Of a DNA stretch of 40,689 bases, positions 553 through 32,323 are shown piece after piece; positions within the stretch are counted from its first letter, which is position 1; each line of letters begins with the position of its first letter. Below the pieces are notes generated by a model. That model searched no databases. It saw nothing but the letters and a program-made list of their open reading frames with translations, and was not told where the DNA came from. The stretch covers positions 1 through 40,689 of the forward strand of contig JAADVB010000173.1 of assembly GCA_023334545.1 (NCBI GenBank), written 5' to 3'. Both the position numbers and the translations under genes were made by a program. The DNA is from Salisapilia sapeloensis CBS 127946. Lineage: Eukaryota; Protista; Oomycota.

Positions 553-1257
553 CTATTGCTGTTTCTTAATTTCCTCTTCGGCTGTCGGGTCGCTATCTCC
601 ATGAAGCAGAAAAGCGACACCGACCAAAATGGCCGTCGCCCCGACGAACCATTGAGCTGGCAATGGTTCTTGGAAGAGTATGTAACCACTAGCAGCCTGC
701 AATAAAGATAAGTATAAGCGGAATATCCAACTTAAAGAATCGAGAGACGTACAGAGAGGATAAAGTTCGATGCAGAGCTCGTGACGGTGGCTGTGAGCGA
801 GTCCGTTTCATGCAATCCGTTAACAAAAAAGCGAAGCATGACAGCGTTTGAAGCCAGCATCAACCCAACGCATGCTACGCGAGTGATTGCAGCAATCTAT
901 GGATTTTATGAGCTTGATAGCATATCGTGCCGAGAGAGAGGTGTACCGTGTCACATGATACACTGATAGCAGTGGCACTCGCGAGTGTGGTGCATTGATC
1001 GACTACGATATCCAGAAATGATGTGCTGCCATCAGCTGCGAGCTGAGCAACGAGATTAGTTACAAGAGTATCTTGGCGTTGCGAGGAGCTGCTGCACCTT
1101 GCCAAACGTGCCGCCGAGAGCGCCGCATGCGCCAGCGAGAGCACTAGAATAGCCGCGTGTGAGCTAATTGGACCGACTAGATGTATGGAATATGGAGCTC
1201 GGAACAAGCGACGTCGTAGCGCATCAGCACGAGCGTGCTTACCAACCTTGATCGCAT
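553..1257 (-). CDS. TMEM42: TMEM42-like small multi-pass membrane protein (DMT/EamA-related), 154 aa, 5 exons
   Basis: Exons 1243-1257, 1098-1163, 947-1042, 753-896 and 553-696 join in frame through GT-AG introns of 79, 55, 50 and 56 nt. Translation MRSRLLTRGYSSALAGACGALGGTFGKLAADG...RVACVGLMLASNAVMLRFFVNGLHETDSLTATVTSSASNFILSAASGYILFQEPLPAQWFVGATAILVGVAFLL matches the TMEM42 pattern (AG..GA...FGKLA; NAVM..F; LF.E.L...W..G..LIL.G). The gene is absent from the ORF track. Confidence 0.85.
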
Positions 1258-2443
1258 TATCGTTTATTGTTGTCGTTTGAAGTGTCCGAGGAATTGTGAA
1301 TGGGTTCAGTAGGAGCTACGCCGCGACGTCTGAAGGATACGCTGCTTTAAGAGACGTAGAGGTATTCTTACAGCTCGCCTTGGTTGCAAGAAATATGCAT
1401 CGCATGTGTATGCTGTGGATGATACGGATGCACAGGAAGGCAATGTAGCAATATCTGAATGGATAGGCACTCGTACAAAGAGGTGCATACAGTAAAGTGG
1501 TGAAAGGAGCTAAACTCAGCTGGAATAAGAAAGGCGCAATGGAACGAGGAAAGAAGCGAGAGTCGCTGACGACAGAACCAGTCTTGGGATTGTGTGACCG
1601 TCGAAGCGGTGAATATTTGTTTGCATGCGAAATGCACGCGAAAATGGTAACTGGGTGTAAATTGACGTGTTTGCACGTGATGGCCTGTTAGAAGGAACGC
1701 GAAGACCCATGTAACTGGCACGCGCAGCATTGTAGCAGCAAGGACAAGCGAGAAAAGATAACGGTCGCCCATTGTAGCTGCTGGATTGCTGTATCTTGCG
1801 ACGATTCACAGTGCTGGTTGTTCATTGGTTATTAAAGCATTGGACGCCAGTGATTGGACTGCGTGGCTTGAGTGGCTCTGGGCAATACCAAGAAATTATT
1901 CAAACCGTAAAAAGCAAAGGGCGCCTGCATGGCAGAGGTCTCTTCGAGAAGTAGCGTCAATTTTATGTGTGTGGTAGAGTTTGTAGCCTGTATATCTTCG
2001 GAATTCTCGGCTAAGGATCTCTGATCCAGAGTTATGCTTCAACCGTGCATCTCTCTACATCCGCGGCCGTAGAGCAAGTTATGGGCGCTTAGGGATCGTT
2101 TTGGATGCCTCTTTTGGCGTGAAAAAATGGTTTTCAAAGTGCTCTCCATCCAGACCAGCGCTTTTGTTCCCAGCGTACGAATCTTTCCCGTGCAACTGGG
2201 TTCGAAGCGCCAAGAAACGTAGCGAGCATAGATGTATGACATCCTCTAATTTTTTAACGTCGTGTCCACGAACTTCGAATAAATATTACCCTCCACAAGC
2301 TCTGTGACTCGATGCAAGAGCCGCGCGTCGTTCGCTTCGATCGCTCTTGGCCTTGATAGGAAGAAACGTCTGGCCTCCTCGTAGCGCATCTTAAAATTAG
2401 CTAATTTGTCCCGCTTATTGACCAGTCACATACTGAGCGCCAG

Positions 2444-2458
2444 TCACTCCAAGTTTAC
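2444..2458 (+). promoter_or_regulatory. Candidate oomycete initiator (Inr, YCAYTYY) with FPR-like downstream element for the zf-PARP gene
   Basis: TCACTCC followed by AAGTTTAC, 119 nt upstream of the ATG at 2563. The motif is short and could occur by chance. Confidence 0.3.
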
Positions 2459-2562
2459 CAATCCATCCGATGGTCCGTCCCATATGCTTTTGGCTCTTGT
2501 AGGCCGGGACGAAGCTCACTTGCAAATTTACGCCGCATTGGATCACCCGTACTGCCTCCAGG

Positions 2563-2910
2563 ATGTCAAGCCCAGATGCACGCACGCCATCGCCTTGGAA
2601 GAAAGACGGGACGTACATTGTCGAACCGATCAAGAAGCACACGAGTGCCTGCTGCCGAGCCTGTGAAGCTGCATTGGACGTCGGCCAATTGCGCGTTGGT
2701 GTCGTCTTCCAGCATCGCAACGGTTTCGTCTGCATCAACTGGTACCACATTGAGTGCTACGGCCCGCACTTGCGAAGCATTCCTCTCCAGAACTTGGAAG
2801 GCTATGATGAGCTAGACGCCGCGCAGAAAAAGTTACTGGAAAGTTACCACGCCTCGGCGTCCAACGCGACGGATCGATGTCTGCCTCACCCACCTACATG
2901 CTCGGCATGA
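2563..2910 (+). CDS. Stand-alone PARP-type zinc finger protein (zf-PARP), 115 aa
   Basis: YIVEPIKKHTSACCRACEAALDVGQLRVGVVFQHRNGFVCINWYHIEC fits the zf-PARP pattern: Y.VE......C..C...I..G.LR.G......WYH..C, followed by LEGYDELDAAQKKLL (canonical ..GF..L...DQ..I). No other domain. Confidence 0.85.
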   Translation: MSSPDARTPSPWKKDGTYIVEPIKKHTSACCRACEAALDVGQLRVGVVFQHRNGFVCINWYHIECYGPHLRSIPLQNLEGYDELDAAQKKLLESYHASASNATDRCLPHPPTCSA

Positions 2911-3218
2911 GATTCATTTTTGGACCAAAGATGATGCTTTCTTAGATGAAGAAATTGCCACATACATGTATTTAAAGCAGTGACTGATAGTCGAGGCCCA
3001 TACTCGAATGAAATATATCCCATTTTCCTTCCCACCTACCGCGTCGTCTCGTTGCAAAAGTTTGTTCAAAATTCGTTAGAAACAGGCACAGACGACAAAG
3101 TTTCGACCAAGTCGCGACGTCGAAGTCGAGTTAGTTGTCATCGAGTCTACTGCGGTCGATCGCGCACCTACGTCTTGTTCCAACGCAAGACTATACACAA
3201 ACGGGATCTCCAAGGCGG

Positions 3219-3804
3219 ATGGAATCGCTCGGCAGCGGTTCACGAGCTGATAAATTGCACGCTTACAACGATGCGCTGGTCCATTCCGCGACGTGCTCGG
3301 ACTCACACTGCCAAGCCTACAATGGTCGGTGTCATAAAGTAAAAGTTAGCCGAAAGCACTTCGTCGAGTGCTACGGACCACGGCGAAATTATTCACCTGT
3401 CGAAAGGTACGGCATGCTATCCACACGAGCTTGATAGACGACTGATTTATACTGGTGCTAGCTGTGAATCGTGCTCGAAATTCTGGGGACTCTTGTGCTT
3501 CCACGCACGAACGTGTGAGGCGCCTGCAGGACAACATTGTATCGTACCGCAATGTGATTATTTGCGAGTGAAGATTGCTCGAAAGCGGAACCAGGATAGG
3601 CACGAACAGGTTCGAGCTAGGGAACAGATCCAGCAGCAGCGGGACGAATGGCCGGTGGAAAGACGGATTGCTCAAGTGGAACAGGACCGACAACAAGTGC
3701 TTCAGATCATTGCCGACATTAAAGCTAGTCGAGGTCAGCAGGTTGCTGCTCCGAACGACGAAACCCCGATGAACGCCCACCCGTCGATGATGTCCATTGG
3801 ATAA
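3219..3804 (+). CDS. Stand-alone TAZ zinc finger plus C-terminal coiled coil, paralog 1 (176 aa, 2 exons)
   Basis: join(3219-3406, 3462-3804), with a 55-nt intron GTACGG...CTGAT...CTAG that restores the frame between two ORF-track fragments. Three HCCC sites: HSATCSDSHC..C, HFVEC..CESC, HARTC..CIVPQC. Confidence 0.88.
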
Positions 3805-6529
3805 TACAGCTACGTCGACTTGCATTCATAGAAGCTTCTGAAAGCATATAGGCGAGCATAGTTAGCATTGTGCTGGCGCACCGTCACGGTTGGCACCACC
3901 CGCTAACACATAATACAATCCAGCGTTCTTACTAAGCATACAGAAAGCAAAAGCAGTCGTTCGGTCACGATTAGATACTAATCATGCTATTAAACTCATA
4001 CAAACAGTACCCGAGGTGATGGCCGACGTTTACAACAGAGAAAAGGAAGCTCAAGGTTGAAGACAGCCGAAAGGATGGATGCTTGAACGCCTTCTAAAGA
4101 TCAATAAGAGCTTTAGTGGTTTAAATGCAAGTCGAAGCGAACTTCAATCGAGAATGGAAACGATAGAAGAAGCCCTATCGAGAAACTGCTTGTTCTTTTA
4201 CTTATACATTCTTCAACGTTTTCTTATGAGCTCTAAACGCCCAGAACATGGACAGTACGAACTGATCGGCCTAGTGATATGATCTTCATCACGACCACAG
4301 AGTCAGTACGTCAGATGCGTACAGTATCGTTACTACTTCTCGTATATATCTTGAAGAGTTTTGATTTTGCATCGTGGTGATACTTCCCCATATCCGATTT
4401 GCATTTTATTTTATTTTAAAGAGTGAAAGATACAAGATCTGGCATATACCCATTCCAGATACCGTTTCTCTGATATACTTCCTTTCGAAAGGTACACAAG
4501 GGAAGGACGGGAAGAGAGGAGGTGTAACTGTCACAGGAGAGAAAGCAGGAACAATAGGAAGAGCTTGTTCGTATTCTCCTCTGCCAAAGCTCATTTGAAA
4601 ACGGCAAGCCGTTTCCTCCCACCTAGAATTGATGTTAAACAAATGATATCTGAACAACCAAGTTTTTTTGGTATTGACGTTTGATGAAAGTAGCACGAAC
4701 AGTAGCTTTGTCAAGGTAGCGTGTTGCATCAGCTGAAGCTACGAGCAATGGAGTACTCCATCTTCTTTTTGTATAATATAGAGTAACACCGAGGTAGATG
4801 ACGAAGCGAGTCTCCAGATTATATGGTCGTACTCGACCGAGCAATATAATTTAGCGCATCACAATCTTTTGCAAACTCTTTGCAATTCATATGAAGAGAT
4901 GAGCTTGCGCCTGAGTCAAAGATGATCAGAAAACGCTTTCATACTCTGAAGACTTCCATGGCAGAATCATAGCAGTCATAGGTATACCTCTGCCATTGTA
5001 ATAGTTAGCCTGTATACTGGGACACCATTTTCTACGACTTTCTACCATGCGAATACCAAAGTTACTTCCTATACCAAAAGTGTTTATAGCATGTGCATGG
5101 CCAGTACCCATCTGTCGTTTCTTTAAAAGAAACCTGCGGACGAAGACCGTCCTATGTACACTTCGGAACTGTGTACCGAAGCGGGAATTTAACAATGAAT
5201 CACCAAAACAAGCATACAGCTAGTGCTGTATGTTGTTTTCTAAGCAACATCATCGTGTGTGATGATTGGTTAGCACTCCTTTGTGTTCTTTAGGCCTGCA
5301 TCTTCATTGCAATGCTATTTCCTCTTTTAGGGCTCGCAGCACTTTGAAAATGCACATTGTGCCAGATCACGAGTACTGGAGTGGTTACTTGTCTGCATCA
5401 ACCGATTCATTTCGCCTTTCAACTGTAAGATTGACGATAGAGATACACAAAAGAGATCACATCGTCGAGTATTTTGCAGTTTGATTCTCATTGACGTTAT
5501 GGAAATCTAGAAGATGGTTTCGTTCCAACTTCAACACAACTTCAAGAAAACTGTACAGATAGTTTTCCAAGTATTGTCATTCCCGTTTAAATTCACCGAC
5601 TACCGGGTATTCTAAGCGAAAAAAGAAATCTGGCATCCATACTGGTCTCCCGTATGCGCTCGACAATATATGAGTGTAGACGGCTACGCATATCTGCAGC
5701 ACACGTGCCGCATAGCTTTCCGCCCACATGAATCCCTCACAATACCGCCGACGTCCCTTTTTCATATGCATATCTCCAATGGCCGTGCTTTAGCGCTCGC
5801 ATATCTTCGCTCTGTGCATCTTCTTCTGTTCATTTCGGTCGTCGAAATGTCCGTTGTCAGCTGCCTTTGTATGTCGGCTCCTTTACGTTGCCTTGCCAGA
5901 TTTGTTGAATGCAAGCTATTTCAGTCATACTTCGAGCTCCCTCCGGCTGACCGGCACGCGTTGACGAAGGAGTGACCTCGAGGAAGACCCGGCCTCCCCG
6001 GAGGTCTTGCACGCTGAGCGCGGATTGCTTCTGTTCGGTTGCGCACTATGAGGAATCGGAGAATGAGCAGTTTTGTTCAAGGCTTGAAAGAAAGGATGTG
6101 ACATTAGGCTGGAAGGGTAGCCAAAAGGTCCGAGACGACTACGATGGATAATGTAGATAGATAAGAGAAGATTGAAGATAACCAAGAATCAGCACTGTCC
6201 AACGCGAAAAGTCTCTACACTGCAGCCATATTCCTCTTTCATTCATCACCCTTCATAATATATCGAGAAACTAAAAAGATTTTCTTACTGCTACCGTTCC
6301 GAAAACTTCTCCGGAAAGTCCTCTTTGTATTCTATTTCTCGATAATTCATTTTTGGCAGTCTAAAATGTACATTTAAGAGGTCTGGCGATTCGAGTCTGG
6401 CGATTCAATGAACCGCTGTAGGAAAGTTTGAGTAGAACCAACAATAACTTTGTAGCTGCTCACATTCGGGAAGCACTTTTGAAATCAAACCACCGGCCTT
6501 CCTCCCTTCACTTTCGCTTCCGTGGTAAT

Positions 6530-8292
6530 ATGGAGCAAACAGGTCCAGTATTCGTCTCTAATTGATGACGTAGCTAAATTTGTCACTGCCTTCCTTAATC
6601 TACGAGTATACCCATTTTAAAAGCGAGTACATATTACTCGATATATCTTCTCCAGCGATGGTGCATCCTCGCCGAGTGCTCTGGCCCTCGTGATGAGTGG
6701 GATGATGTAGTCACCAATGCTTCCAAAGATGGTCGCTTCGACATGGTTGCTACTCTTCATATCTTTCGTCCAAAATGGTACCTTCCACTACAAACAATGG
6801 AAGCTGTTGCCATCCACAGCTAACTGGCCTTAGCTCAATGGATATATGCCAATCGACCGTTGAAGTCTTTTACCTACCAAGGCATGGATAACGCAGCAAT
6901 AGGAGGCTATATAATAACAATTCAGTGGCTCCATTTACTTGGAGATGATGACGGCGGAGGCGCTACACGCCATGCGATGGACAATGCTTGCACCGAAGGT
7001 TGTCTGGAGCTATCTGAATGGCTCCACCAGAATCGAAGTGAATAATGTACGACAAGTGCTCTGAATGGGGCTACAACGAATGGTCACTTGAACGTATTGG
7101 AGTGGCTAGAAGGAAGCCGAACGGAAGGTTTTACGATTGACACAATGAAGGGACCAACTCTTAACGACTATATTTGCATTCTCGAGTGGTTATCTACTCG
7201 AAAGATGAAGCGAGGTCCTAAAACGTCACCTCACATGCTCGAACTGGTCGCCCGGAACGGTTATATGTAAACAATCAAGTGGTTGTTGGTCTATCGAGAG
7301 GAAAAGCTAGCGAGAACAAATGCGATTGATGAGGCTGCTGGGAATGACCACTTAGAAATCGTTCAATTTATATTTGAACGAGCTTCAGCGTACAAGCTGA
7401 AGCAATTGATCAAAACGTTGTTGCGTAGAATCGGTTTCATAACGGGCGTGAAGGTACTGCGTTGGCTATTGCCCAAGGGTGCCTATCAGAAGTTTTCCGT
7501 TAAGCTTGGACTCGAGAAGTATATTTGTTTGGGTGGCCTCGAGTGCGTTCGTGTACTGCGTGAGTACTATCCGAAACTATTTGAGCGAAACGAGAAAAGA
7601 ACGGCTGCAGTTGCAGTCAATCATGGTCAAGTGCGTGCCGCAGTATACCTCCTAGGTCTGTTGCAGGACGACTCAGAAACCTATGGTCAGTTGGAAGTAG
7701 CGGAATGACTGCACACTATAAGCCCATTTGCGAACACAGATAGAGTGCAAGATGTAGTGATACGAGATGGTGACATCGAAACAATTTCTTTTCTTATGGA
7801 AACAGGAAAAGTGGATGCGGCTACATGTACTCGAGACGCAGCTAGTTGCGGTCATTTAAAAATGATTAATATTTCTTGGAGAAGCCATTTATCGAAGTGG
7901 ACGACTAACTTATGCACATGGCAGCGGAATATGGACACATGAGCATCGTCAAGTGTCTGCATGAAAATCGACCGGAAGGATGCGACCAAGATGCGATGGA
8001 CAATGCGATAGAAAGCGGATGAACCAATATCGTCAAGTTTCTCAATGAGAACCGGACGGAAGGATGCTCGGAGCATGCAATTAAATATGCGGCCTTTAAT
8101 GGACAGTTAAATACGCTCATCTATCTCCATCACCACCGACCAAAAGGATATTCAGTGATCACGATTCGAGTGAGTATAGAGGCGTGCCAAGACGAAGTGA
8201 CGCATTGGCTCAAGAAGCATAGCCCGGTCTTTGCTGAATGTCGGGAGTGTCAACGAGAGGTGAGATCGAATAAGATGCGCCGTCGAGGATGA
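6530..8292 (+). pseudogene. Ankyrin-repeat pseudogene (oomycete-expanded 'AMDxAAxNGHLxVVxWLHxNRxEGC' family)
   Basis: ORFs 6860, 7088, 7283 and 7745 are in one frame; in-frame stops lie at 6821, 7043, 7268 and 7706. A frameshift follows near 7860-7920, with another stop at 8020. Repeats include MDNAAIGG..IQWLH, AMDNACTEGCLELSEWLHQNRSE*CTTSALNGATTNGHLNVLEWL and AAEYGHMSIVKCLHENRPEGCDQDAMDNA. Confidence 0.88.
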
Positions 8293-26580: not shown

Positions 26581-28149
26581 CTACTTGGACAAGAGACTCG
26601 CTCGATCGACGTCATCAATGAGCGTCTGCCGGACGGGAAAGTCGAGCATCGGCATGCTGTCCTGTCGACTGCGACCGGTTTCATCTACTAGAATGACGTC
26701 ATCCACTTCATCTTCTTCTGCCTCATCCTCCTCCATCAACACGTTGGCGCTGTCTCGAGTTAGAACGTCCATGAGCGATGGATTGAAGCGCATGCGAGGG
26801 GAATCACCGTCGAAAAAGTCGGATTCTTCGCTGTCCGTATCGAACTCGTCACTATTTGTAGACGGACGCTGGGTCGTTGGGCCGACGTCACTGTGCATCG
26901 AGTGACTCGCATCATCTCCGTCTGAACCACGACTGGTAGCTAATTGACAGGCGTTAGTTTCTTCAGCATGGTTCGAGGTGAAGAAAAAGTTACCATTGCC
27001 GTCTATACCTTCGTCGCTATGAGCTCGACTACTGTAGCGTGCAGAGAAGACAGAGGATTCGCTAGCTTGGAGGATACTCAAGTACTTTTGATCTGTCCGT
27101 CGACTTGCTCGTTGGGTAGGACGAGAGGATGCGTATGAATTACGCGTGCTTTCATCTTCTGTTGTCGCCGTGTCCTCTTCTATGGCTTGTGCATTTTCAC
27201 TATCGTTACTCGTTCGTTCCTCTGTCAAGTCCTTACAAGGTCCGGTCTCTTTCTCTGCTGGTACCTCACTCTCTATCGAAGCTTTCGAGTCGACATAGGA
27301 GTCGACAGACAGATTGACAACGGACGGAGGCGGCTCTTCATCTATACTGTAGGCCACAGTGGGCTCCTCGTCTGTCTGTTCATTCGGTTGATTCACTTTG
27401 GACCGACTGAGTCGACTATCTACTTTTGCCTGCCTAGCTTTATACTCCTTTTGAGATAAGGAGAGCATCCGCATCTGCAGTCGTAATTTCCCTGCTGATT
27501 TTTTACCAGCCTTGAGCTCCACCCACTTATCTACGCTTAAATCATCCAAATCTCGTAACGATATGGCACAGGCACCAATGGCCGGTGTCGTCATTAGCCT
27601 CGCGCTCTTCACGCGTATCGATAGAATTTCATTTGCAGGGTCTGATACCGGTATCTCGAACTTTTCATTCCACATCGGATTCCGCTTTCCTGGTGGCTGT
27701 GTCCCTGTCTTTCGAATATGGTATCGAGAGCCATTACGATGTGCGTCGTTGGGTAGATGCACTTCACCTGATGCTGCTTTCGTGTCCGGCACAGGTTCTA
27801 ATAACAGCATTTGCTTGAGGGAAGAACGACTGCCACGGGTCATGTCATGATCCGTTACGTAAATCTTACAGTACGTGCCGTGGGAACTGACATGCCTGAG
27901 GTTTTCTGCGGAATGGATGCGAAGTAGGAGCCGATACTTCATCGCGTCACTCGACCGACGTCGCGATGGCGAGTCCATACTCGCGCGTGGCGTGGATCGA
28001 AAGCTAAAGTAGTCTCGAAAGGACGAGGTGGTATCTACGGGGAGGTTCTGCACAGGGGAGGTTTCCGGAAGGGAAGACGCGCTCTCTGTGGCACTAGTAG
28101 ACGCTGTCGGCTTGCTACCCGCTTTCGAGACGCAGCACAAGAATGACAT
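26581..28149 (-). CDS. C2-domain protein with long acidic/Ser-rich disordered tail (C2 paralog 1)
   Basis: Beta-strand pattern YRLLLRIHSAENL...YCKIYV...NPMWNEKFEIPV....EILSIRVKS....IGACAISL......DKWVEL....SAGKLRLQM. Likely start is MSFLCC at 28149; the ORF track starts at 28188. Confidence 0.85.
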   Translation of the reverse strand: MSFLCCVSKAGSKPTASTSATESASSLPETSPVQNLPVDTTSSFRDYFSFRSTPRASMDSPSRRRSSDAMKYRLLLRIHSAENLRHVSSHGTYCKIYVTDHDMTRGSRSSLKQMLLLEPVPDTKAASGEVHLPNDAHRNGSRYHIRKTGTQPPGKRNPMWNEKFEIPVSDPANEILSIRVKSARLMTTPAIGACAISLRDLDDLSVDKWVELKAGKKSAGKLRLQMRMLSLSQKEYKARQAKVDSRLSRSKVNQPNEQTDEEPTVAYSIDEEPPPSVVNLSVDSYVDSKASIESEVPAEKETGPCKDLTEERTSNDSENAQAIEEDTATTEDESTRNSYASSRPTQRASRRTDQKYLSILQASESSVFSARYSSRAHSDEGIDGNGNFFFTSNHAEETNACQLATSRGSDGDDASHSMHSDVGPTTQRPSTNSDEFDTDSEESDFFDGDSPRMRFNPSLMDVLTRDSANVLMEEDEAEEDEVDDVILVDETGRSRQDSMPMLDFPVRQTLIDDVDRASLLSK

Positions 28150-28248
28150 GAAGGCCTTTCCGCTGCGTCTAATATTTCGGAACTGCATCTAGAAACGGCA
28201 GAATGCGGTTTTTATAATGGTACTGGGCGGGTAGCTGTTCGGAATTAG

Positions 28249-28253: not shown

Positions 28254-28295
28254 GGGCGGACCTCGTCGAAAGGGAGCGCTGGATACTCACGGCAG

Positions 28296-28661
28296 ATGGA
28301 GGATGCCAACAGCCAAGTCTTCGTTGACAACGACAGCGAAGTACCGACTATGGTAGTGTTGTCAGGTCTCGTTGCTCAATTGCCAGACGCTTTTAGTTCG
28401 ATTGAAACGGGCCACATCTTGCTATGGGACGCGACCGATAGCGACAAGTTAGACCGGATGAAGGGGCGCTCGGCCGTTCAGACGTATAGGAATACGGCGA
28501 GTGGAAACTTGCACAAAATTTCCACGCATCCGACTGAATTACCCACGATCGGACGCAAGCACGTCTTTCACCCAAGAAGCCAGCGATTCGATCAGAATGG
28601 AGAGTGCCTGCAGCTATCTAGGCCAAGCTACTGCACAGAGCCAGATTGGATTACGGCGTAA
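28296..28661 (+). CDS. Hypothetical 121-aa ORF (possible gene fragment)
   Basis: True ATG start, divergent from C2 paralog 1 across about 150 nt. No recognisable motif. Confidence 0.2.
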   Translation: MEDANSQVFVDNDSEVPTMVVLSGLVAQLPDAFSSIETGHILLWDATDSDKLDRMKGRSAVQTYRNTASGNLHKISTHPTELPTIGRKHVFHPRSQRFDQNGECLQLSRPSYCTEPDWITA

Positions 28662-29072
28662 TCGCTTTCACCGGTGCGAAAGTCCTGCCGATTTGGACGG
28701 CCCTTCTCAAATAAATACAGCACGCTGATACCATCACACAGCTCGTTTCGTCACCTCTGCTGACACTACAGCAAGGGCTCAGAGCGTGAGTTCCAGAGTT
28801 GTATCGCGGTGATAATGGCATGAAGCCACAGCACAGGTCGATTAAGATCCTCTCTCAGTGCATAGACGCTACTAGAGATACAGTATGAATCTGAGTCATT
28901 GAAAATACCACACTTATCTATTCCGAAACGAAACAACGATTGAGCAGGATTGTTTGGTAACCTCGCAGCTTGACATTACGTTTATGTCTCATTTGACTAT
29001 CCCAAGGCAATTTCAACTACTACCTACTTCCTCTATATCTCTGGTCAAGCTGCAAGTATAGCTTCCATCAGT

Positions 29073-30878
29073 CTAGGCATATTCAGCTGTAGCAGCAGCT
29101 ACTGTAATCGTTCCAGCTTCAGAAGAGTAGCCGATAGCTGAATCAGCTGTCATGACCATCGTCTTCGACACATCGAAGTAGCATTCGCTTCCTGGCGTCG
29201 AGTCGCCACTACGTGCCACTAGCCCACCTTTTGTCGTTGCGTAGTAGAATCCTGCCGTTTCTACAGTTGACACATCCTTCACATCGCCTCGAATCACCAC
29301 TTTCGCATCATTTCCAGACTCATAGTCGGCGAGCACACCCATGGGCTTTCCATAGTTTTCAACAAGTGCCATACCGTTGTAAGCGTTCTTGCCGCGCTTG
29401 CCGATGTATCCAACCATGACGCTGTCATCAGCAACGTTCAACGAGTCTAGCGTCACAGTGCCTGCAGGCGAGTCATCCGACTTGGCAATCGTGAGCGAGA
29501 ACGTCTCGCTTCCGATCGGTAGAACAGGAGTCAGAGTTTTGAAAGCCATCGTACTTGGCGAGTACTTAAGCAGACGGGTGCATGGCTTTCCGTTCATGGA
29601 TGGATTGAAGAAGGATACAGCGATTCGGTTACCACTGAGCATACGTAGGCTAGGCATCGTGTTGAATGGATACTGACCAAGTCCGAACTCAATCTCGCCA
29701 CGGACATCCGAATCGACGTACGAAGCTCGGAAACGTACACTATCGTCGGTGCTAGATAGCTCGATGACTGAAGTCGTGAGTGCATGATTCTTCATCTTGT
29801 CATGATACGACACAGCGACTGCTTCGGTGGACAATGGAAGGACGCCCAAGTACATGTCTGGACTGACATTTTCATTGCACGTTCCTTCTGCAAAGGTGCT
29901 AAACTCATTTTTGGTTTGCGAATAAGTCGAAGTGGTGATGCAAAGTCCAGAGCCTTTGCTAGTATAGTAAGCGACAGCGACCAGCTTATTGTTATCTGGA
30001 AGTACAAAAGGTCTCGAAAACGTAGTCTGTCCATTTTCTCCTCCGTTTTCCGGGCCAAAGGTCTCGCTGTCTCCGAGGCTAATGCTACCGGAAGCAACTT
30101 TACCGGCAACAATCCTTTGGCCGTACGGACTGGGATCATAATATTCATAGTACGCTACGGCAAACACATTGGTGTCGACTTTGGAGATGAAGTTTGCAAC
30201 GGATCCGACAGCTACTGTAACCTTTTCGCCTAGCTTCAACGTAACCGTCGCTCCATCGATGTCTACGGGAGCAACGTAGACAGTATAGGTAGAATCTACA
30301 ATGAGAATGACCGCAGTGTCATCCGAGAGGGTCACAACGCCACGAATGACTCCATCGGATACGATATTGGAGTCTGGGATGGATTCTTCTGGATCAACGG
30401 ACTTGTCGGCATTATTCAAAGCCATCGTCGTCACAACACACTCCGTTTTACTATTCTTCGTTCGGCAGTATGTAACTAAGCCGCGAGAGTACGAAGTTTG
30501 GGAAATACCAAGCGGAGCCATATTCATGTACGAGTACTCGTAGTCAGAGCTAAAGGTGGTAGCATCGAGGTATCCGGTAGTACCAGCGCCATTACGGAGT
30601 ACTGACATACTGTTGAAACTGACGGCATCTCCGGTGGTTGGAGACACCGATGGCATTTCCTCGAACTTGGAAAAGGTGAGCTCTGCTCTACCCGATGGCT
30701 TGTCGGTAAAGTGGATGATGTACAATGCGACGAGATTGATCATGATCAACGCGCAGACCACGATGGCGATCATGAAAGTGGAGCATGAACACCATGTTTT
30801 GGATTTCGGAGTATCTTCAGGTGCTGCAGCTCCGAGATTGATCTCAGCAGAGTCTACGGGTTTCGACGGTGGACCCAT
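29073..30878 (-). CDS. Type II single-pass membrane protein with predicted beta-propeller ectodomain and phage-like C-terminal beta domain, 601 aa, intronless
   Basis: One TM segment (FMIAIVVCALIMINLVALYIIHF, aa 35-57). Recurrent blade-like motifs LSDDTAVILIVD, VDTNVFAVAYY, DNNKLVAVAYY, LSTEAVAVSYHD, LSGNRIAVSFFN and VADDSVMVGYIG. The ORF is long and unbroken. Confidence 0.85.
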   Translation of the reverse strand: MGPPSKPVDSAEINLGAAAPEDTPKSKTWCSCSTFMIAIVVCALIMINLVALYIIHFTDKPSGRAELTFSKFEEMPSVSPTTGDAVSFNSMSVLRNGAGTTGYLDATTFSSDYEYSYMNMAPLGISQTSYSRGLVTYCRTKNSKTECVVTTMALNNADKSVDPEESIPDSNIVSDGVIRGVVTLSDDTAVILIVDSTYTVYVAPVDIDGATVTLKLGEKVTVAVGSVANFISKVDTNVFAVAYYEYYDPSPYGQRIVAGKVASGSISLGDSETFGPENGGENGQTTFSRPFVLPDNNKLVAVAYYTSKGSGLCITTSTYSQTKNEFSTFAEGTCNENVSPDMYLGVLPLSTEAVAVSYHDKMKNHALTTSVIELSSTDDSVRFRASYVDSDVRGEIEFGLGQYPFNTMPSLRMLSGNRIAVSFFNPSMNGKPCTRLLKYSPSTMAFKTLTPVLPIGSETFSLTIAKSDDSPAGTVTLDSLNVADDSVMVGYIGKRGKNAYNGMALVENYGKPMGVLADYESGNDAKVVIRGDVKDVSTVETAGFYYATTKGGLVARSGDSTPGSECYFDVSKTMVMTADSAIGYSSEAGTITVAAATAEYA

Positions 30879-30928
30879 GAGTTTGGTGACGCGCGATGTC
30901 CTGAGGTGAGTACAAGCGAGCGGAAACT

Positions 30929-30935
30929 GGAATGA
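30929..30935 (-). promoter_or_regulatory. Candidate Inr (TCATTCC) with adjacent AGTTTCC, upstream of the propeller gene
   Basis: Minus strand reads GGTTCATTCCAGTTTCC about 55 nt upstream of the ATG at 30878, matching the oomycete Inr YCAYTYY. Confidence 0.4.
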
Positions 30936-32323
30936 ACCGAGTCATGGTGGTTTGATGCTTGTATATTTTTATTCACCCGTTTCGTAGAATGGAAACCCCT
31001 CATTTATAAAAATAACTTTGTATGATCCTTTGCTGGGAAGGACAAGAATAAACTCTACAGGAGCTCGGGAGAAAGTAGGCATTTACATCATATTCATCCG
31101 AAATCCATTTCATATCAGTATTGGTTACACTAAAGTTGAATGCTCTTTAATGATGTACCGGATAGAGCTACCAGCATATTTGTAAGAACAATTACCATGT
31201 ATCATTTGAGAGATAACGATCGGTGGATGTATCACATACAATTGCTGAAAATAAGCCCTACATAGTCGATTCAACGGCTTGCCAATTAAAGATATAAACT
31301 ATCGAAGACATTCTGCTTAAATGGTAAATGCAAGTCCGTCAATCCTTTCATTGGTATTGCTCAGAATCAAAGTCGGTGCCAAAATAGACAGTGTTCTTGA
31401 TCTTAGCTTTTTCGAGGATGATAGCTTTTTATTGTGTTGCTAGGAATAATAAGATCTACGTATATATTCCAAGCCAGCTATCACTCTAGAATAAATACTA
31501 TTCGTTGCGTCGATAACGCTTCCTATACTAGTGAAAGTAGGCGAATCGTATCTGAGTACTCGAAGGATAAGGATGTTAGCTAACGATAAAGTCATCAAGA
31601 TAAGAGGAGTCGAGCACCGAATGACGCAAACAGCATTTAAACCTTCTTGGCTATACAAGACGCACACCATTCATCAGGGCGGGTTTCATGCTAGCTAGCT
31701 TCGCAGTCACCTTACCTATCCAACAAGCGTATATTAGCAAATACAACTGACTATCTATTTGTAATTATACAAGCATTCGGAGATCAGGCCAGACTTGCAA
31801 AGTTGATGGGAGCTACAACCAGCTATCCACTAGAAACACATTTCCCGTGTGCCATAGAGCATAGCTACAGAAATTGGAAGTGTACACTACCGAATACAAA
31901 TGTTTATCTATCTTGATGAATAAAATTTATTGCACTACTTTTAGTATCTTCTTATCTAGCAATTGCATGATGCAAAATCCACACTAGTTATTCGACTCAA
32001 CGAATATCATTAGGCTCGAACATCATGATACCACGTTGTTTCACCTCCGCTTTAATTCTTCCTACCGATCTATCAATGTGACGATCAGGTCAAGTGAAAG
32101 GTCAAGAGTAGCTTCAAGATGGCACCATCCGCCGTCTGGCAGCACTAATTTCACGGCATGCATCCTATCCGCACTCTATTTTCCTATACAAAAGTGGCGC
32201 TTTGAATAGACATGCTCCTATTTTCCACTTGAGCACGAAAAGCCCAAGTGACCAGGAAAAACTGGACGTTCGACACCTCTTCTACCATTACCATACGAGC
32301 AGGGAAGAAGAAGAGTAGTTTAT

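What the first reader, a model, noticed from the sequence alone, without database searches (positions are those of the whole stretch)
29073..30878. Intronless membrane-anchored protein whose ectodomain looks like a phage tail beta-propeller plus phage C-terminal beta domain
Seen in the sequence: an N-terminal TM anchor, then about six repeats of the form L[ST]xxx[VI]AV[AS]Y. The last ~90 aa (29073-29352) read KPMGVLADYESGNDAKVVIRGDVKDVSTVETAGFYYATTKGGL...AIGYSSEAGTITV. From recall, many bacteriophage (e.g. marine phage) virion/tail proteins combine blades like LSSTKVVIAYRD with a terminal motif like IGIA...G.TV.V...G.V...SGLT.G..YY....G.L...G.A.S.T.L.V, related to DUF2190-like/cement beta-clip domains. 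Inference: a virion adhesion or trimerisation module was acquired horizontally and refitted with a eukaryotic signal-anchor as a cell-surface adhesin or lectin. The missing introns and the Inr-like element upstream fit a domesticated, expressed acquisition.
Basis: partly seen in the sequence, partly recalled or inferred. Interest (0 to 1): 0.78.

Follow-up and report, generated by a model that had tools for sequence, protein, structure and literature searches.

The report
Eukaryotic membrane protein with phage-tail-like ectodomain
This oomycete-type gene encodes a membrane-anchored protein whose whole outer part (a seven-bladed propeller plus a small end domain) is distantly but detectably related to tail-fibre-region proteins of marine bacteriophages, and the same protein family turns out to be old and scattered across several eukaryotic groups.

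Summary
The 601-aa intronless ORF at 29073-30878(-) is real and transcribed at a low level. It encodes an N-terminal TM anchor, a 7-bladed beta-propeller (about aa 65-510) and a 90-aa C-terminal beta domain.

No Pfam, PHROG, PDB-sequence or BLAST match exists. Profile methods nevertheless link it to a large family of uncultured marine phage proteins, typified by Lentibacter phage ICBM2 gp49 in the tail-fibre module:
- C-domain: hhalign 96%, P 2e-9.
- Propeller alone: 92%, P 6e-7, blades in register.
- Full length: 457 colinear columns.
- A whole-database HMMER search with the oomycete profile reached phage-family members at E 1e-5.

Some phage C-domains pass Pfam's threshold for Phage_cement_2 (DUF2190). 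The fold search for the window's C-domain is headed by phage capsid cement proteins, at low Z.

A recent domesticated acquisition is not. The gene has a paralog in its own genome and orthologs in Phytophthora and Lagenidium. More distant TM-anchored relatives occur in Blastocystis, Mallomonas, Capsaspora and Dracoamoeba, and all of these group together against the phage proteins.

Any transfer was ancient, and its direction is inferred rather than shown. The function, probably a surface glycan-binding receptor or adhesin, is untested.

The parts
29073..30878 (-). Complete intronless ORF, 601 aa plus stop
   Evidence: ORF list. Full-length alignment with 4 homologs. Colinear contigs.
30783..30878 (-). 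Short N-terminal, presumably cytosolic, tail (aa 1-32), with a KPVDS motif shared with P0001 and P0004
   Evidence: alignment. pLDDT below 50, disordered.
30705..30782 (-). Single transmembrane signal-anchor helix (aa 33-58)
   Evidence: AlphaFold2 helix 33-58. Hydropathy maximum 2.95. Present in all complete eukaryotic relatives and absent from the phage relatives.
29349..30686 (-). Seven-bladed beta-propeller (aa ~65-510), with blade motifs at aa 184, 234, 295, 349, 414 and 482
   Evidence: Model. VIA Z 24-29 to 7-bladed propellers. Foldseek BFVD best hits are marine Caudovirales proteins, E 2e-15. hhalign against the phage propeller gives 92%, P 6.4e-7.
29877..29942 (-). Invariant cysteine pair C313 and C334 within blade 4-5, a possible disulfide that would fit a lumenal or extracellular location
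   Evidence: Invariant columns in alignment A1. The disulfide is inferred.
29076..29348 (-). C-terminal beta domain (aa 511-601), a remote relative of the phage cement (Phage_cement_2/DUF2190) type, with a ~25-aa insertion relative to the phage version
   Evidence: Domain model pLDDT 85. hhalign against the phage C-domain gives 96.2%/P 2.3e-9 and 95.6%. The insertion is visible. VIA top hits are phage cement or decoration proteins at Z 3-4.5.
29061..31024 (.). Span covered by low-depth transcript-like contigs in four runs of one study
   Evidence: table 8. There is no coverage at 31031-31600.
30929..30992 (-). Two Inr-like heptamers (TCATTCC at 30929-30935, CCATTCT at 30986-30992)
   Evidence: Function as a start site is not shown, because contigs reach 30969-31024.
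30844..30945 (-). Out-of-frame upstream ORF (33 codons) overlapping the main start codon, lying inside the contig-covered leader

Best explanation
The gene encodes a type II (N-in, C-out) single-pass membrane protein. It belongs to an unnamed eukaryotic family found in oomycetes, Blastocystis, a chrysophyte, Capsaspora and an amoebozoan. The complete ectodomain, a 7-bladed beta-propeller followed by a small cement-type beta domain, descends from the same ancestor as a large family of tail-fibre-module proteins of uncultured marine tailed phages, typified by Lentibacter phage vB_LenP_ICBM2 gp49. In the eukaryotic proteins the phage N-terminal virion-attachment segment is replaced by a cytosolic tail plus TM anchor. 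Shown: the architecture, the homology, the eukaryote-only anchor, vertical inheritance within oomycetes with an old duplication, and low-level intronless transcription. Inferred: the module came from the phage world, because the C-domain's wider superfamily (Phage_cement_2) is phage-specific and the phage family is far more diverse. Also inferred: the capture was ancient, and the protein now displays the propeller at the cell surface or in an endomembrane lumen as a glycan- or ligand-binding receptor or adhesin, in the way a phage receptor-binding protein binds host surface polysaccharide.
For: Architecture. Eukaryotic family and paralog. Tree: eukaryote/phage split at SH-aLRT 100 and oomycete clade at 99; the window protein groups with the Lagenidium subfamily (98) and the paralog with P. 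ramorum (96). Link to phage, from several lines. (1) Whole-database HMMER with the oomycete profile hits P0069 (E 1.4e-5) and P0086 (3.4e-4), and both are clear phage-family members (E 6e-52 and 1e-140). (2) P0086 matches ICBM2 gp49 by tblastn at 8e-5. (3) hhalign gives 96.2%, P 2.3e-9 for the C-domain, against a best score of 14.8 versus 52.4 in 31 controls. Full length gives 96.6% over 457 colinear columns. The propeller alone gives 92.1%, P 6.4e-7, with the in-register alignment best and controls at or below 18 versus 59.5. (4) Foldseek BFVD best hits are the same phage proteins (E 2e-15 to 6e-13, including ICBM2 A0A3G2YRE6), against about 1e-8 for PDB propellers. (5) Atlas feature and shape searches point to Uroviricota clusters, some with PF09956. 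Phage context: gp49 lies between tail-fibre-assembly genes in the region the Cobavirus paper calls the tail-fibre module (PMC6775973). Other members sit downstream of capsid and adaptor genes, and there are 22 IMG/VR loci. Phage C-domain as Phage_cement_2: 9 of 24 hit the model and two exceed the gathering score. Transcription.
Against: No direct BLAST, Pfam, PHROG or PDB-sequence match of the window protein to any phage protein. Homology rests on profile-profile scores with self-made alignments, on weak HMMER hits that could partly reflect blade-repeat composition, and on predicted structures. Fold similarity of the C-domain to solved cement proteins is low (Z at most 4.5), and Foldseek BFVD found nothing for it alone. 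The direction and timing of transfer cannot be read from an unrooted tree. Topology, localisation, ligand and oligomeric state are untested, and the trimer job gave no verdict. That the runs are RNA is only the tool's guess, supported by one spliced joint in the neighbouring gene.
Confidence: 0.72

Rival explanations
1. The resemblance to phage proteins is convergent or a compositional artefact. On this view the protein is an ordinary eukaryotic beta-propeller membrane protein with an unrelated small beta domain.
For: Propellers are very common, with 788 PDB chains at Z>=8. There is no direct sequence hit to phages. The C-domain fold match is weak, and hhalign of the shallow profile against a single gp49 sequence found nothing.
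Against: Two domains match independently and in the same order, with blades in register. Controls score far lower. The whole-database HMMER search reached phage-family proteins. Phage proteins outrank all PDB propellers in Foldseek by about 7 orders of magnitude.
Confidence: 0.07
2. This is a recent, lineage-specific horizontal acquisition from a phage into this genome, or phage or bacterial contamination of the assembly.
For: The ORF is intronless. GC content is ordinary for the window, so composition does not argue either way.
Against: A 33%-identical paralog lies on another contig. Orthologs in Phytophthora and Lagenidium sit on Mb-scale scaffolds. The window protein nests inside a well-supported oomycete clade. 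The flanking genes are eukaryotic, and one has a spliced intron. The best phage similarity is only detectable by profiles.
Confidence: 0.02
3. The homology is real but the route differs. Either the module passed from eukaryotes or eukaryotic viruses (giant viruses, polinton-like viruses) into phages, or it reached different eukaryotes several times through such viruses rather than by one ancient capture.
For: The eukaryotic distribution is patchy and the tree does not follow the species tree, since Blastocystis groups with Capsaspora-type sequences and not with oomycetes. Giant-virus proteins appear among the structural matches. A paper reports a long ORF with DUF2190 affinity in polinton-like viruses of a green alga (PMC10675990).
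Against: Phage_cement_2 is a phage capsid and decoration family, and the phage propeller family is much larger and more diverse: at least 296 clusters in one word search. All sampled eukaryotic members share a TM anchor and a C-domain insertion and form one group.
Confidence: 0.13
4. The ectodomain works as an enzyme, such as a polysaccharide lyase, glycosidase or lactonase-like activity like many propeller tailspikes, rather than as a passive binder.
For: The top structural neighbours include a rhamnose-glucuronate lyase, sialidases, lactonases and a glycoside hydrolase. Several charged or polar residues are invariant in the oomycete alignment: R95, E146, D186, D360, R418, D485 and E507.
Against: Lectins (PLL, BP39L) score equally well. 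No catalytic motif of any known family is matched. The invariant residues have not been mapped to a pocket.
Confidence: 0.2

Closest known systems
Lentibacter phage vB_LenP_ICBM2 gp49 (AYP28108.1, UniProt A0A3G2YRE6) and its family of uncultured marine phage proteins (P0126-P0245)
   Same: Both have a colinear beta-propeller plus a C-terminal cement-type domain. They share a blade signature (hydrophobic V-V-A-Y-x-D/E, then G-T-V-S/x-G-x-I-x-F/S-G) and a C-domain motif (P/N-x-G-I ... G-x-V ... L-x-x-G-x-x-Y-Y/F ... G-x-L ... G-x-A-x-S ... L-x-V).
   Different: The phage proteins have no TM segment. They start with a virion-attachment type N-terminus, lack the ~25-aa C-domain insertion, are encoded in tail modules next to tail-fibre assembly genes, and often carry duplicated propeller units of ~850 aa. 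Identity to the window protein is about 15%.
Phage_cement_2 / DUF2190 (PF09956) capsid cement and decoration proteins. Solved examples are Mycobacterium phage Adjutor 8saj_3, Patience gp22 8giu_1, HFTV1 8qsy, Pam3 8hdt_G and TW1 5wk1_X.
   Same: A small all-beta domain of ~80-100 aa. These proteins head the fold search for the window's C-domain. The phage intermediates reach the Pfam threshold.
   Different: The window domain does not match the Pfam model at any E-value up to 10. Z is only 3-4.5. It is a C-terminal domain of a membrane protein and not a free capsid-bound protein.
Seven-bladed propeller lectins PLL (5c9o) and BP39L (6gxr), and other 7-bladed propellers (CylK, Sec12, YncE, lactonases)
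   Same: The same fold, with Z 25-29, 300-330 aligned residues and rmsd ~3 A.
   Different: Only 7-10% identity and no sequence-level relationship. This is fold-level analogy only.
Paramyxovirus attachment glycoproteins (measles H, Langya G)
   Same: Type II membrane anchor followed by a propeller head that binds a cell-surface receptor. They appear among the Foldseek matches.
   Different: They are six-bladed and lack a cement-type C-domain, and there is no evidence of common descent. They are offered only as a functional analogy.

Membership tests
Phage_cement_2 / DUF2190 (PF09956) | Match to the Pfam model at or above the gathering score (24 bits) | tested here: not met
   No PF09956 hit for the window protein, for its C-domain, or for any of 57 eukaryotic C-domains. 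A six-frame scan of the whole genome gave none at E<=10.
Phage_cement_2 / DUF2190 (PF09956) | Profile-level homology to sequences that are themselves members | tested here: met
   Eukaryotic C-domain profile against phage C-domain profile: 96.2% and 95.6%. Nine of 24 phage C-domains hit PF09956, two above the cut-off at 26.1 and 25.7 bits.
Phage_cement_2 / DUF2190 (PF09956) | Fold like that of solved cement or decoration proteins | tested here: inconclusive
   The top 12 VIA hits are almost all phage capsid cement, decoration or head-fibre proteins, but Z is 2.7-4.5. Atlas TM is 0.55-0.62 to viral cement-type clusters. Foldseek BFVD found nothing below E 0.2.
Phage_cement_2 / DUF2190 (PF09956) | Free-standing ~100-150-aa protein bound to capsid threefold sites | tested here: not met
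   Here it is the C-terminal domain of a 601-aa TM protein in a eukaryotic chromosome.
Marine phage tail-module propeller proteins (ICBM2 gp49-like, unnamed) | Propeller followed by a C-terminal cement-type domain, colinear | tested here: met
   hhalign gives 457 colinear columns. The propeller alone aligns in register. The BFVD alignment covers most of both proteins.
Marine phage tail-module propeller proteins (ICBM2 gp49-like, unnamed) | Encoded in a phage structural or tail module, with a phage-type N-terminus and no membrane anchor | tested here: not met
   The window gene lies between eukaryotic genes, one of them spliced, and has a TM anchor.
Eukaryotic TM-propeller-C-domain family (unnamed; P. 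ramorum KRP23_6975, Lagenidium N0F65_004550, Capsaspora CAOG_04254, Blastocystis BLSTO_02023) | Full-length alignment with N-terminal TM, the LRNGAGTT-type first strand, the propeller, and the C-domain with insertion | tested here: met
   33-37% identity over 92-99% of the length, E 1e-84 to 1e-100. Alignment A1. Nested in the oomycete clade.
Seven-bladed beta-propeller fold | Structural superposition on solved 7-bladed propellers | tested here: met
   Z 24-29 over aa ~97-511. Predicted model only, pTM 0.74.

The most novel reading that the evidence does not exclude
A phage receptor-binding protein, made of a tail-fibre propeller plus a cement-type tip domain, was captured early in eukaryote evolution or spread among eukaryotes by their viruses. 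It was given a signal-anchor and has persisted for hundreds of millions of years as a cell-surface receptor that recognises bacterial or cell-wall glycans. It now survives in oomycetes, Blastocystis, chrysophytes, filastereans and amoebozoans. That would be a previously undescribed, phage-derived family of eukaryotic surface receptors.
Probability: 0.25. Interest if true: 0.8.

Novelty: new variant of a known kind. Interest (0 to 1): 0.6.

Why it matters
Neither the eukaryotic family nor the phage family is in Pfam or PHROGs, and a search for the named members' accession numbers found no paper that mentions them. If the homology holds, three things follow. First, a large, uncharacterised class of marine phage tail proteins gains a recognisable domain plan. 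Second, the capsid-cement domain is seen reused at the end of tail proteins and then in eukaryotic membrane proteins. Third, oomycete pathogens, the gut protist Blastocystis and Capsaspora, a close unicellular relative of animals, would share a surface protein of phage ancestry. Its ligand could matter for interactions with bacteria or host surfaces. The family is also experimentally tractable, because the ectodomain can be expressed and the protein tagged.

Tried and rejected
- **Direct sequence searches found nothing usable.** This covers Pfam, PHROGs and PDB sequences with the protein and with family profiles. tblastn of the ectodomain against 50,697 phage genomes gave no match at E<=10. 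The PF09956 model over the whole genome gave none. The weak fvmX2, choline-binding-repeat and WIV_2 hits were treated as chance.
- **hhalign of the 5-sequence profile against the single gp49 sequence failed** (0.8%). The signal appeared only with deeper alignments.
- **Locus and word searches were unproductive.** The word search with A2 gave only 6 hits, all already of the eukaryote type. P0118 against phage genomes gave no match.
- **Foldseek BFVD with the C-domain alone** found nothing below E 0.2.
- **Homotrimer prediction of the C-domain** (3 copies) returned 'no answer', score 0.00. It is not evidence either way.
- **Several Pfam hits on the phage proteins were disregarded.** The PF18050, PF21992, PRY and Agenet hits are short partial blade matches with no significant single stretch.
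- **The ~100-aa 'stand-alone' C-domain proteins** in the big search were first considered free phage cement proteins. The one contig examined shows an internal-Met call inside a longer open frame on a short, eukaryote-like contig.
- **A literature search for the named homologs' accessions** found nothing.
Full report
**Observation.**
- GC content there (0.49) is ordinary for the window.
- A hydrophobic stretch at aa 37-55 (Kyte-Doolittle 2.95) is modelled as a helix at 33-58.
- The rest is all-beta.
A loosened form recurs at aa 184, 234, 349, 414 and 482, and by eye at about 295.
- The AlphaFold2 model (5-sequence alignment, pLDDT 73.8, pTM 0.74) superposes on solved seven-bladed propellers with Z 24-29 over aa ~97-511. 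These include CylK, Sec12, YncE, the PLL and BP39L lectins and lactonases.
- The last ~90 residues fold as a separate small beta domain. Modelled alone with a 57-sequence alignment it reaches pLDDT 85.

**Expression and gene structure.**
- Contigs of four runs from one study lie colinear on 29061-31024 at low depth (3-7).
- There is no coverage in the intergenic stretch 31031-31600.
- The same runs show a 54-nt spliced joint (GT..AG on the minus strand) in the neighbouring C2 gene. That supports these being RNA, and supports the target gene being transcribed without introns.
- Two Inr-like heptamers lie 57 and 114 nt upstream of the ATG.
- The contigs run past the proximal one, so its role as the start site is not shown.
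- A 33-codon out-of-frame upstream ORF would then lie in the leader.

**What the standard searches say.** Nothing.
- There is no Pfam, PHROG or PDB-sequence match for the protein or for family profiles.
- tblastn against 50,697 phage genomes finds no match even at E 10.

**The eukaryotic family.**
- A word search found four full-length homologs at 33-37% identity, one of them from Lagenidium giganteum.
- The window's own 22.4-Mb genome has a second copy on another contig at 33% identity.
- An exhaustive HMMER search with the family profile against 1.84 billion representatives gave 91 hits, 28 of them below 1e-30.
- Named members include Phytophthora ramorum (Mb-scale scaffolds), several Blastocystis strains, Mallomonas annulata, Capsaspora owczarzaki CAOG_04254 and Dracoamoeba.
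- Every complete eukaryotic member has an N-terminal TM segment.
- In a maximum-likelihood tree the oomycete-type sequences form one clade (SH-aLRT 99). The window protein sits in a subfamily with Lagenidium (98). Its paralog pairs with P. ramorum (96). The duplication is therefore old and the gene is vertically inherited.
- This rules out a recent acquisition or contamination.

**The link to phages.** Several lines agree.
1. Foldseek against predicted viral structures ranks uncharacterised marine Caudovirales proteins first, at E 2e-15 to 6e-13. One of them is A0A3G2YRE6 of Lentibacter phage ICBM2. The best PDB propellers reach about 1e-8. Atlas feature and shape searches likewise point to Uroviricota clusters, some carrying PF09956.
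2. The whole-database HMMER search with the oomycete profile reached two non-eukaryotic proteins through the blades: P0069 (a TARA 0.1-0.22 µm sample) at E 1.4e-5 and P0086 at 3.4e-4. Both are unambiguous members of the phage family (E 6e-52 and 1e-140 against a phage-family HMM). P0086 also matches ICBM2 gp49 by tblastn at 8e-5.
3. A word search with gp49 retrieved at least 296 metagenomic relatives.
4. Profile-profile comparison of the eukaryotic and phage alignments gives consistent results:
   - C-domain: 96.2%, P 2.3e-9, 70 columns across the whole domain. A reversed alignment and 30 column-shuffled controls scored at most 14.8 against 52.4. The tool's own hhalign gave 95.6%.
   - Full length: 96.6%, 457 colinear columns.
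   - Propeller with the C-domain removed: 92.1%, P 6.4e-7, 347 columns. The in-register alignment is clearly best (59.5 against 37.9 for a blade-shifted one), and controls scored at most 18.

**Are those proteins really phage tail proteins?**
- In ICBM2, gp49 is flanked by genes that match tail-fibre-assembly PHROGs at E 1e-16 to 1e-18.
- It lies in the region that the Cobavirus paper describes as encoding tail fibres, connectors and assembly proteins (PMC6775973).
- Two metagenomic members sit downstream of major-capsid and SU10-adaptor genes, in tandem with paralogs.
- Twenty-two IMG/VR contigs encode relatives of one short form.
- The family itself has no PHROG or Pfam model.

**The cement-domain question.**
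- Nine of 24 phage C-domains hit Pfam Phage_cement_2 (PF09956). Two are above the gathering score, at 26.1 and 25.7 against 24 bits, and cover profile positions ~21-92 of 103.
- The window's own C-domain never hits that model.
- Its structural search is nevertheless headed almost entirely by phage capsid cement, decoration or head-fibre proteins: Adjutor, Patience gp22, HFTV1, phiCD508, BB1, Pam3, XM1, E217, phi29 gp8.5 and TW1. The Z values are low, at 2.2-4.5.
- I therefore call it a remote relative of the cement superfamily by transitive profile evidence, not a Pfam member.
- Relative to the phage version, the eukaryotic domain carries a ~25-residue insertion.

**Interpretation.**
The evolutionary story needs changing.
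- The nearest relatives are vertically inherited eukaryotic proteins. The family is patchy but spans stramenopiles, a filasterean and an amoebozoan.
- All eukaryotic members share the TM anchor and the C-domain insertion, and they group together against the sampled phage proteins.
- A capture from the phage world is the more economical direction, because the cement superfamily is phage-specific and the phage family is far more diverse. This is inference.
- Transfer through eukaryotic viruses is a live alternative. Giant-virus proteins appear among the structural matches, and a paper reports a long ORF with DUF2190 affinity in polinton-like viruses (PMC10675990).

**Mechanism.**
- Shown: a signal-anchor, an all-beta ectodomain and an invariant cysteine pair in the oomycete alignment.
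- Inferred: N-in/C-out topology, with the propeller displayed on the cell surface or in a lumen as a ligand-binding (probably glycan-binding) module, like a phage receptor-binding protein. I put this function at roughly 35-40%.
- An enzymatic role, such as lyase or glycosidase, is the main functional rival. The structural neighbours include both enzymes and lectins.
- Whether the C-domain drives oligomerisation could not be tested, because the trimer job gave no verdict.

**Novelty.**
- Neither family is curated in Pfam or PHROGs.
- A search for the named members' accession numbers found no paper that mentions them.
- The building blocks are known kinds (a 7-bladed propeller and a cement-type domain), and phage-to-eukaryote gene flow is known in principle.
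- I therefore class this as a new variant of a known kind, of moderate to high interest.

Noticed in passing
window 26940-26993 (minus-strand gene 26581-28188): Contigs of all four runs skip 54 nt with GT..AG ends on the minus strand. The 535-aa C2-protein ORF therefore contains an in-frame 18-codon intron that a plain ORF reading retains. This gene is covered about 30-fold deeper than the target gene.
   Followed up: partly
window 28287-28941: The stretch between the C2 gene and the target gene is covered by contigs at depth 6-41. In run X2 it is continuous with the C2 gene contig up to 28931. This means either a long 5' leader of the C2 gene or a separate small transcript overlapping the 121-aa ORF at 28296-28661(+).
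   Followed up: no
window 30844-30945 (-): An out-of-frame upstream ORF of 33 codons starts 67 nt before the main ATG and overlaps it. It lies inside the contig-covered leader and may affect translation.
   Followed up: partly
G000:C590:30672-32447 (L002 1303-3291): A second copy of the family in the same genome, about 615 aa from the likely Met and 33% identical to the window protein. It is closest to Phytophthora ramorum KRP23_6975 (45%).
   Followed up: partly
L007 (MF431616) 1198-6879: Lentibacter phage ICBM2 has three consecutive large genes: a 'tail protein', an SGL/lactonase-like propeller of 403 aa, and gp49. Each is followed by a small gene annotated as a tail assembly chaperone. The two tested (gp48, gp50) match tail-fibre-assembly families. 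This suggests three different fibre or receptor-binding proteins, each with its own chaperone.
   Followed up: partly
L003 10001-12409 (JGI contig Ga0309772_1007113): An 802-aa metagenomic protein contains four tandem matches to the phage propeller profile. It sits on a 29-kb contig full of small unknown ORFs, plus a DNA methylase, a phosphofructokinase and a nucleoside phosphorylase. The nature of the replicon is unclear.
   Followed up: no
L005 1956-2717(+) and 3-302(-): A 4.5-kb metagenomic contig carries two copies of the eukaryote-type C-domain on opposite strands. The 103-aa 'protein' called there is an internal-Met call inside a 254-codon open frame whose upstream part does not match the propeller profile.
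   Followed up: partly
L011 10001-14017; L012 10001-17957: Uncultured marine phages carry two or three tandem paralogs of the propeller and cement-domain protein (485+851 aa; 850+864+844 aa), downstream of capsid and SU10-adaptor genes.
   Followed up: no
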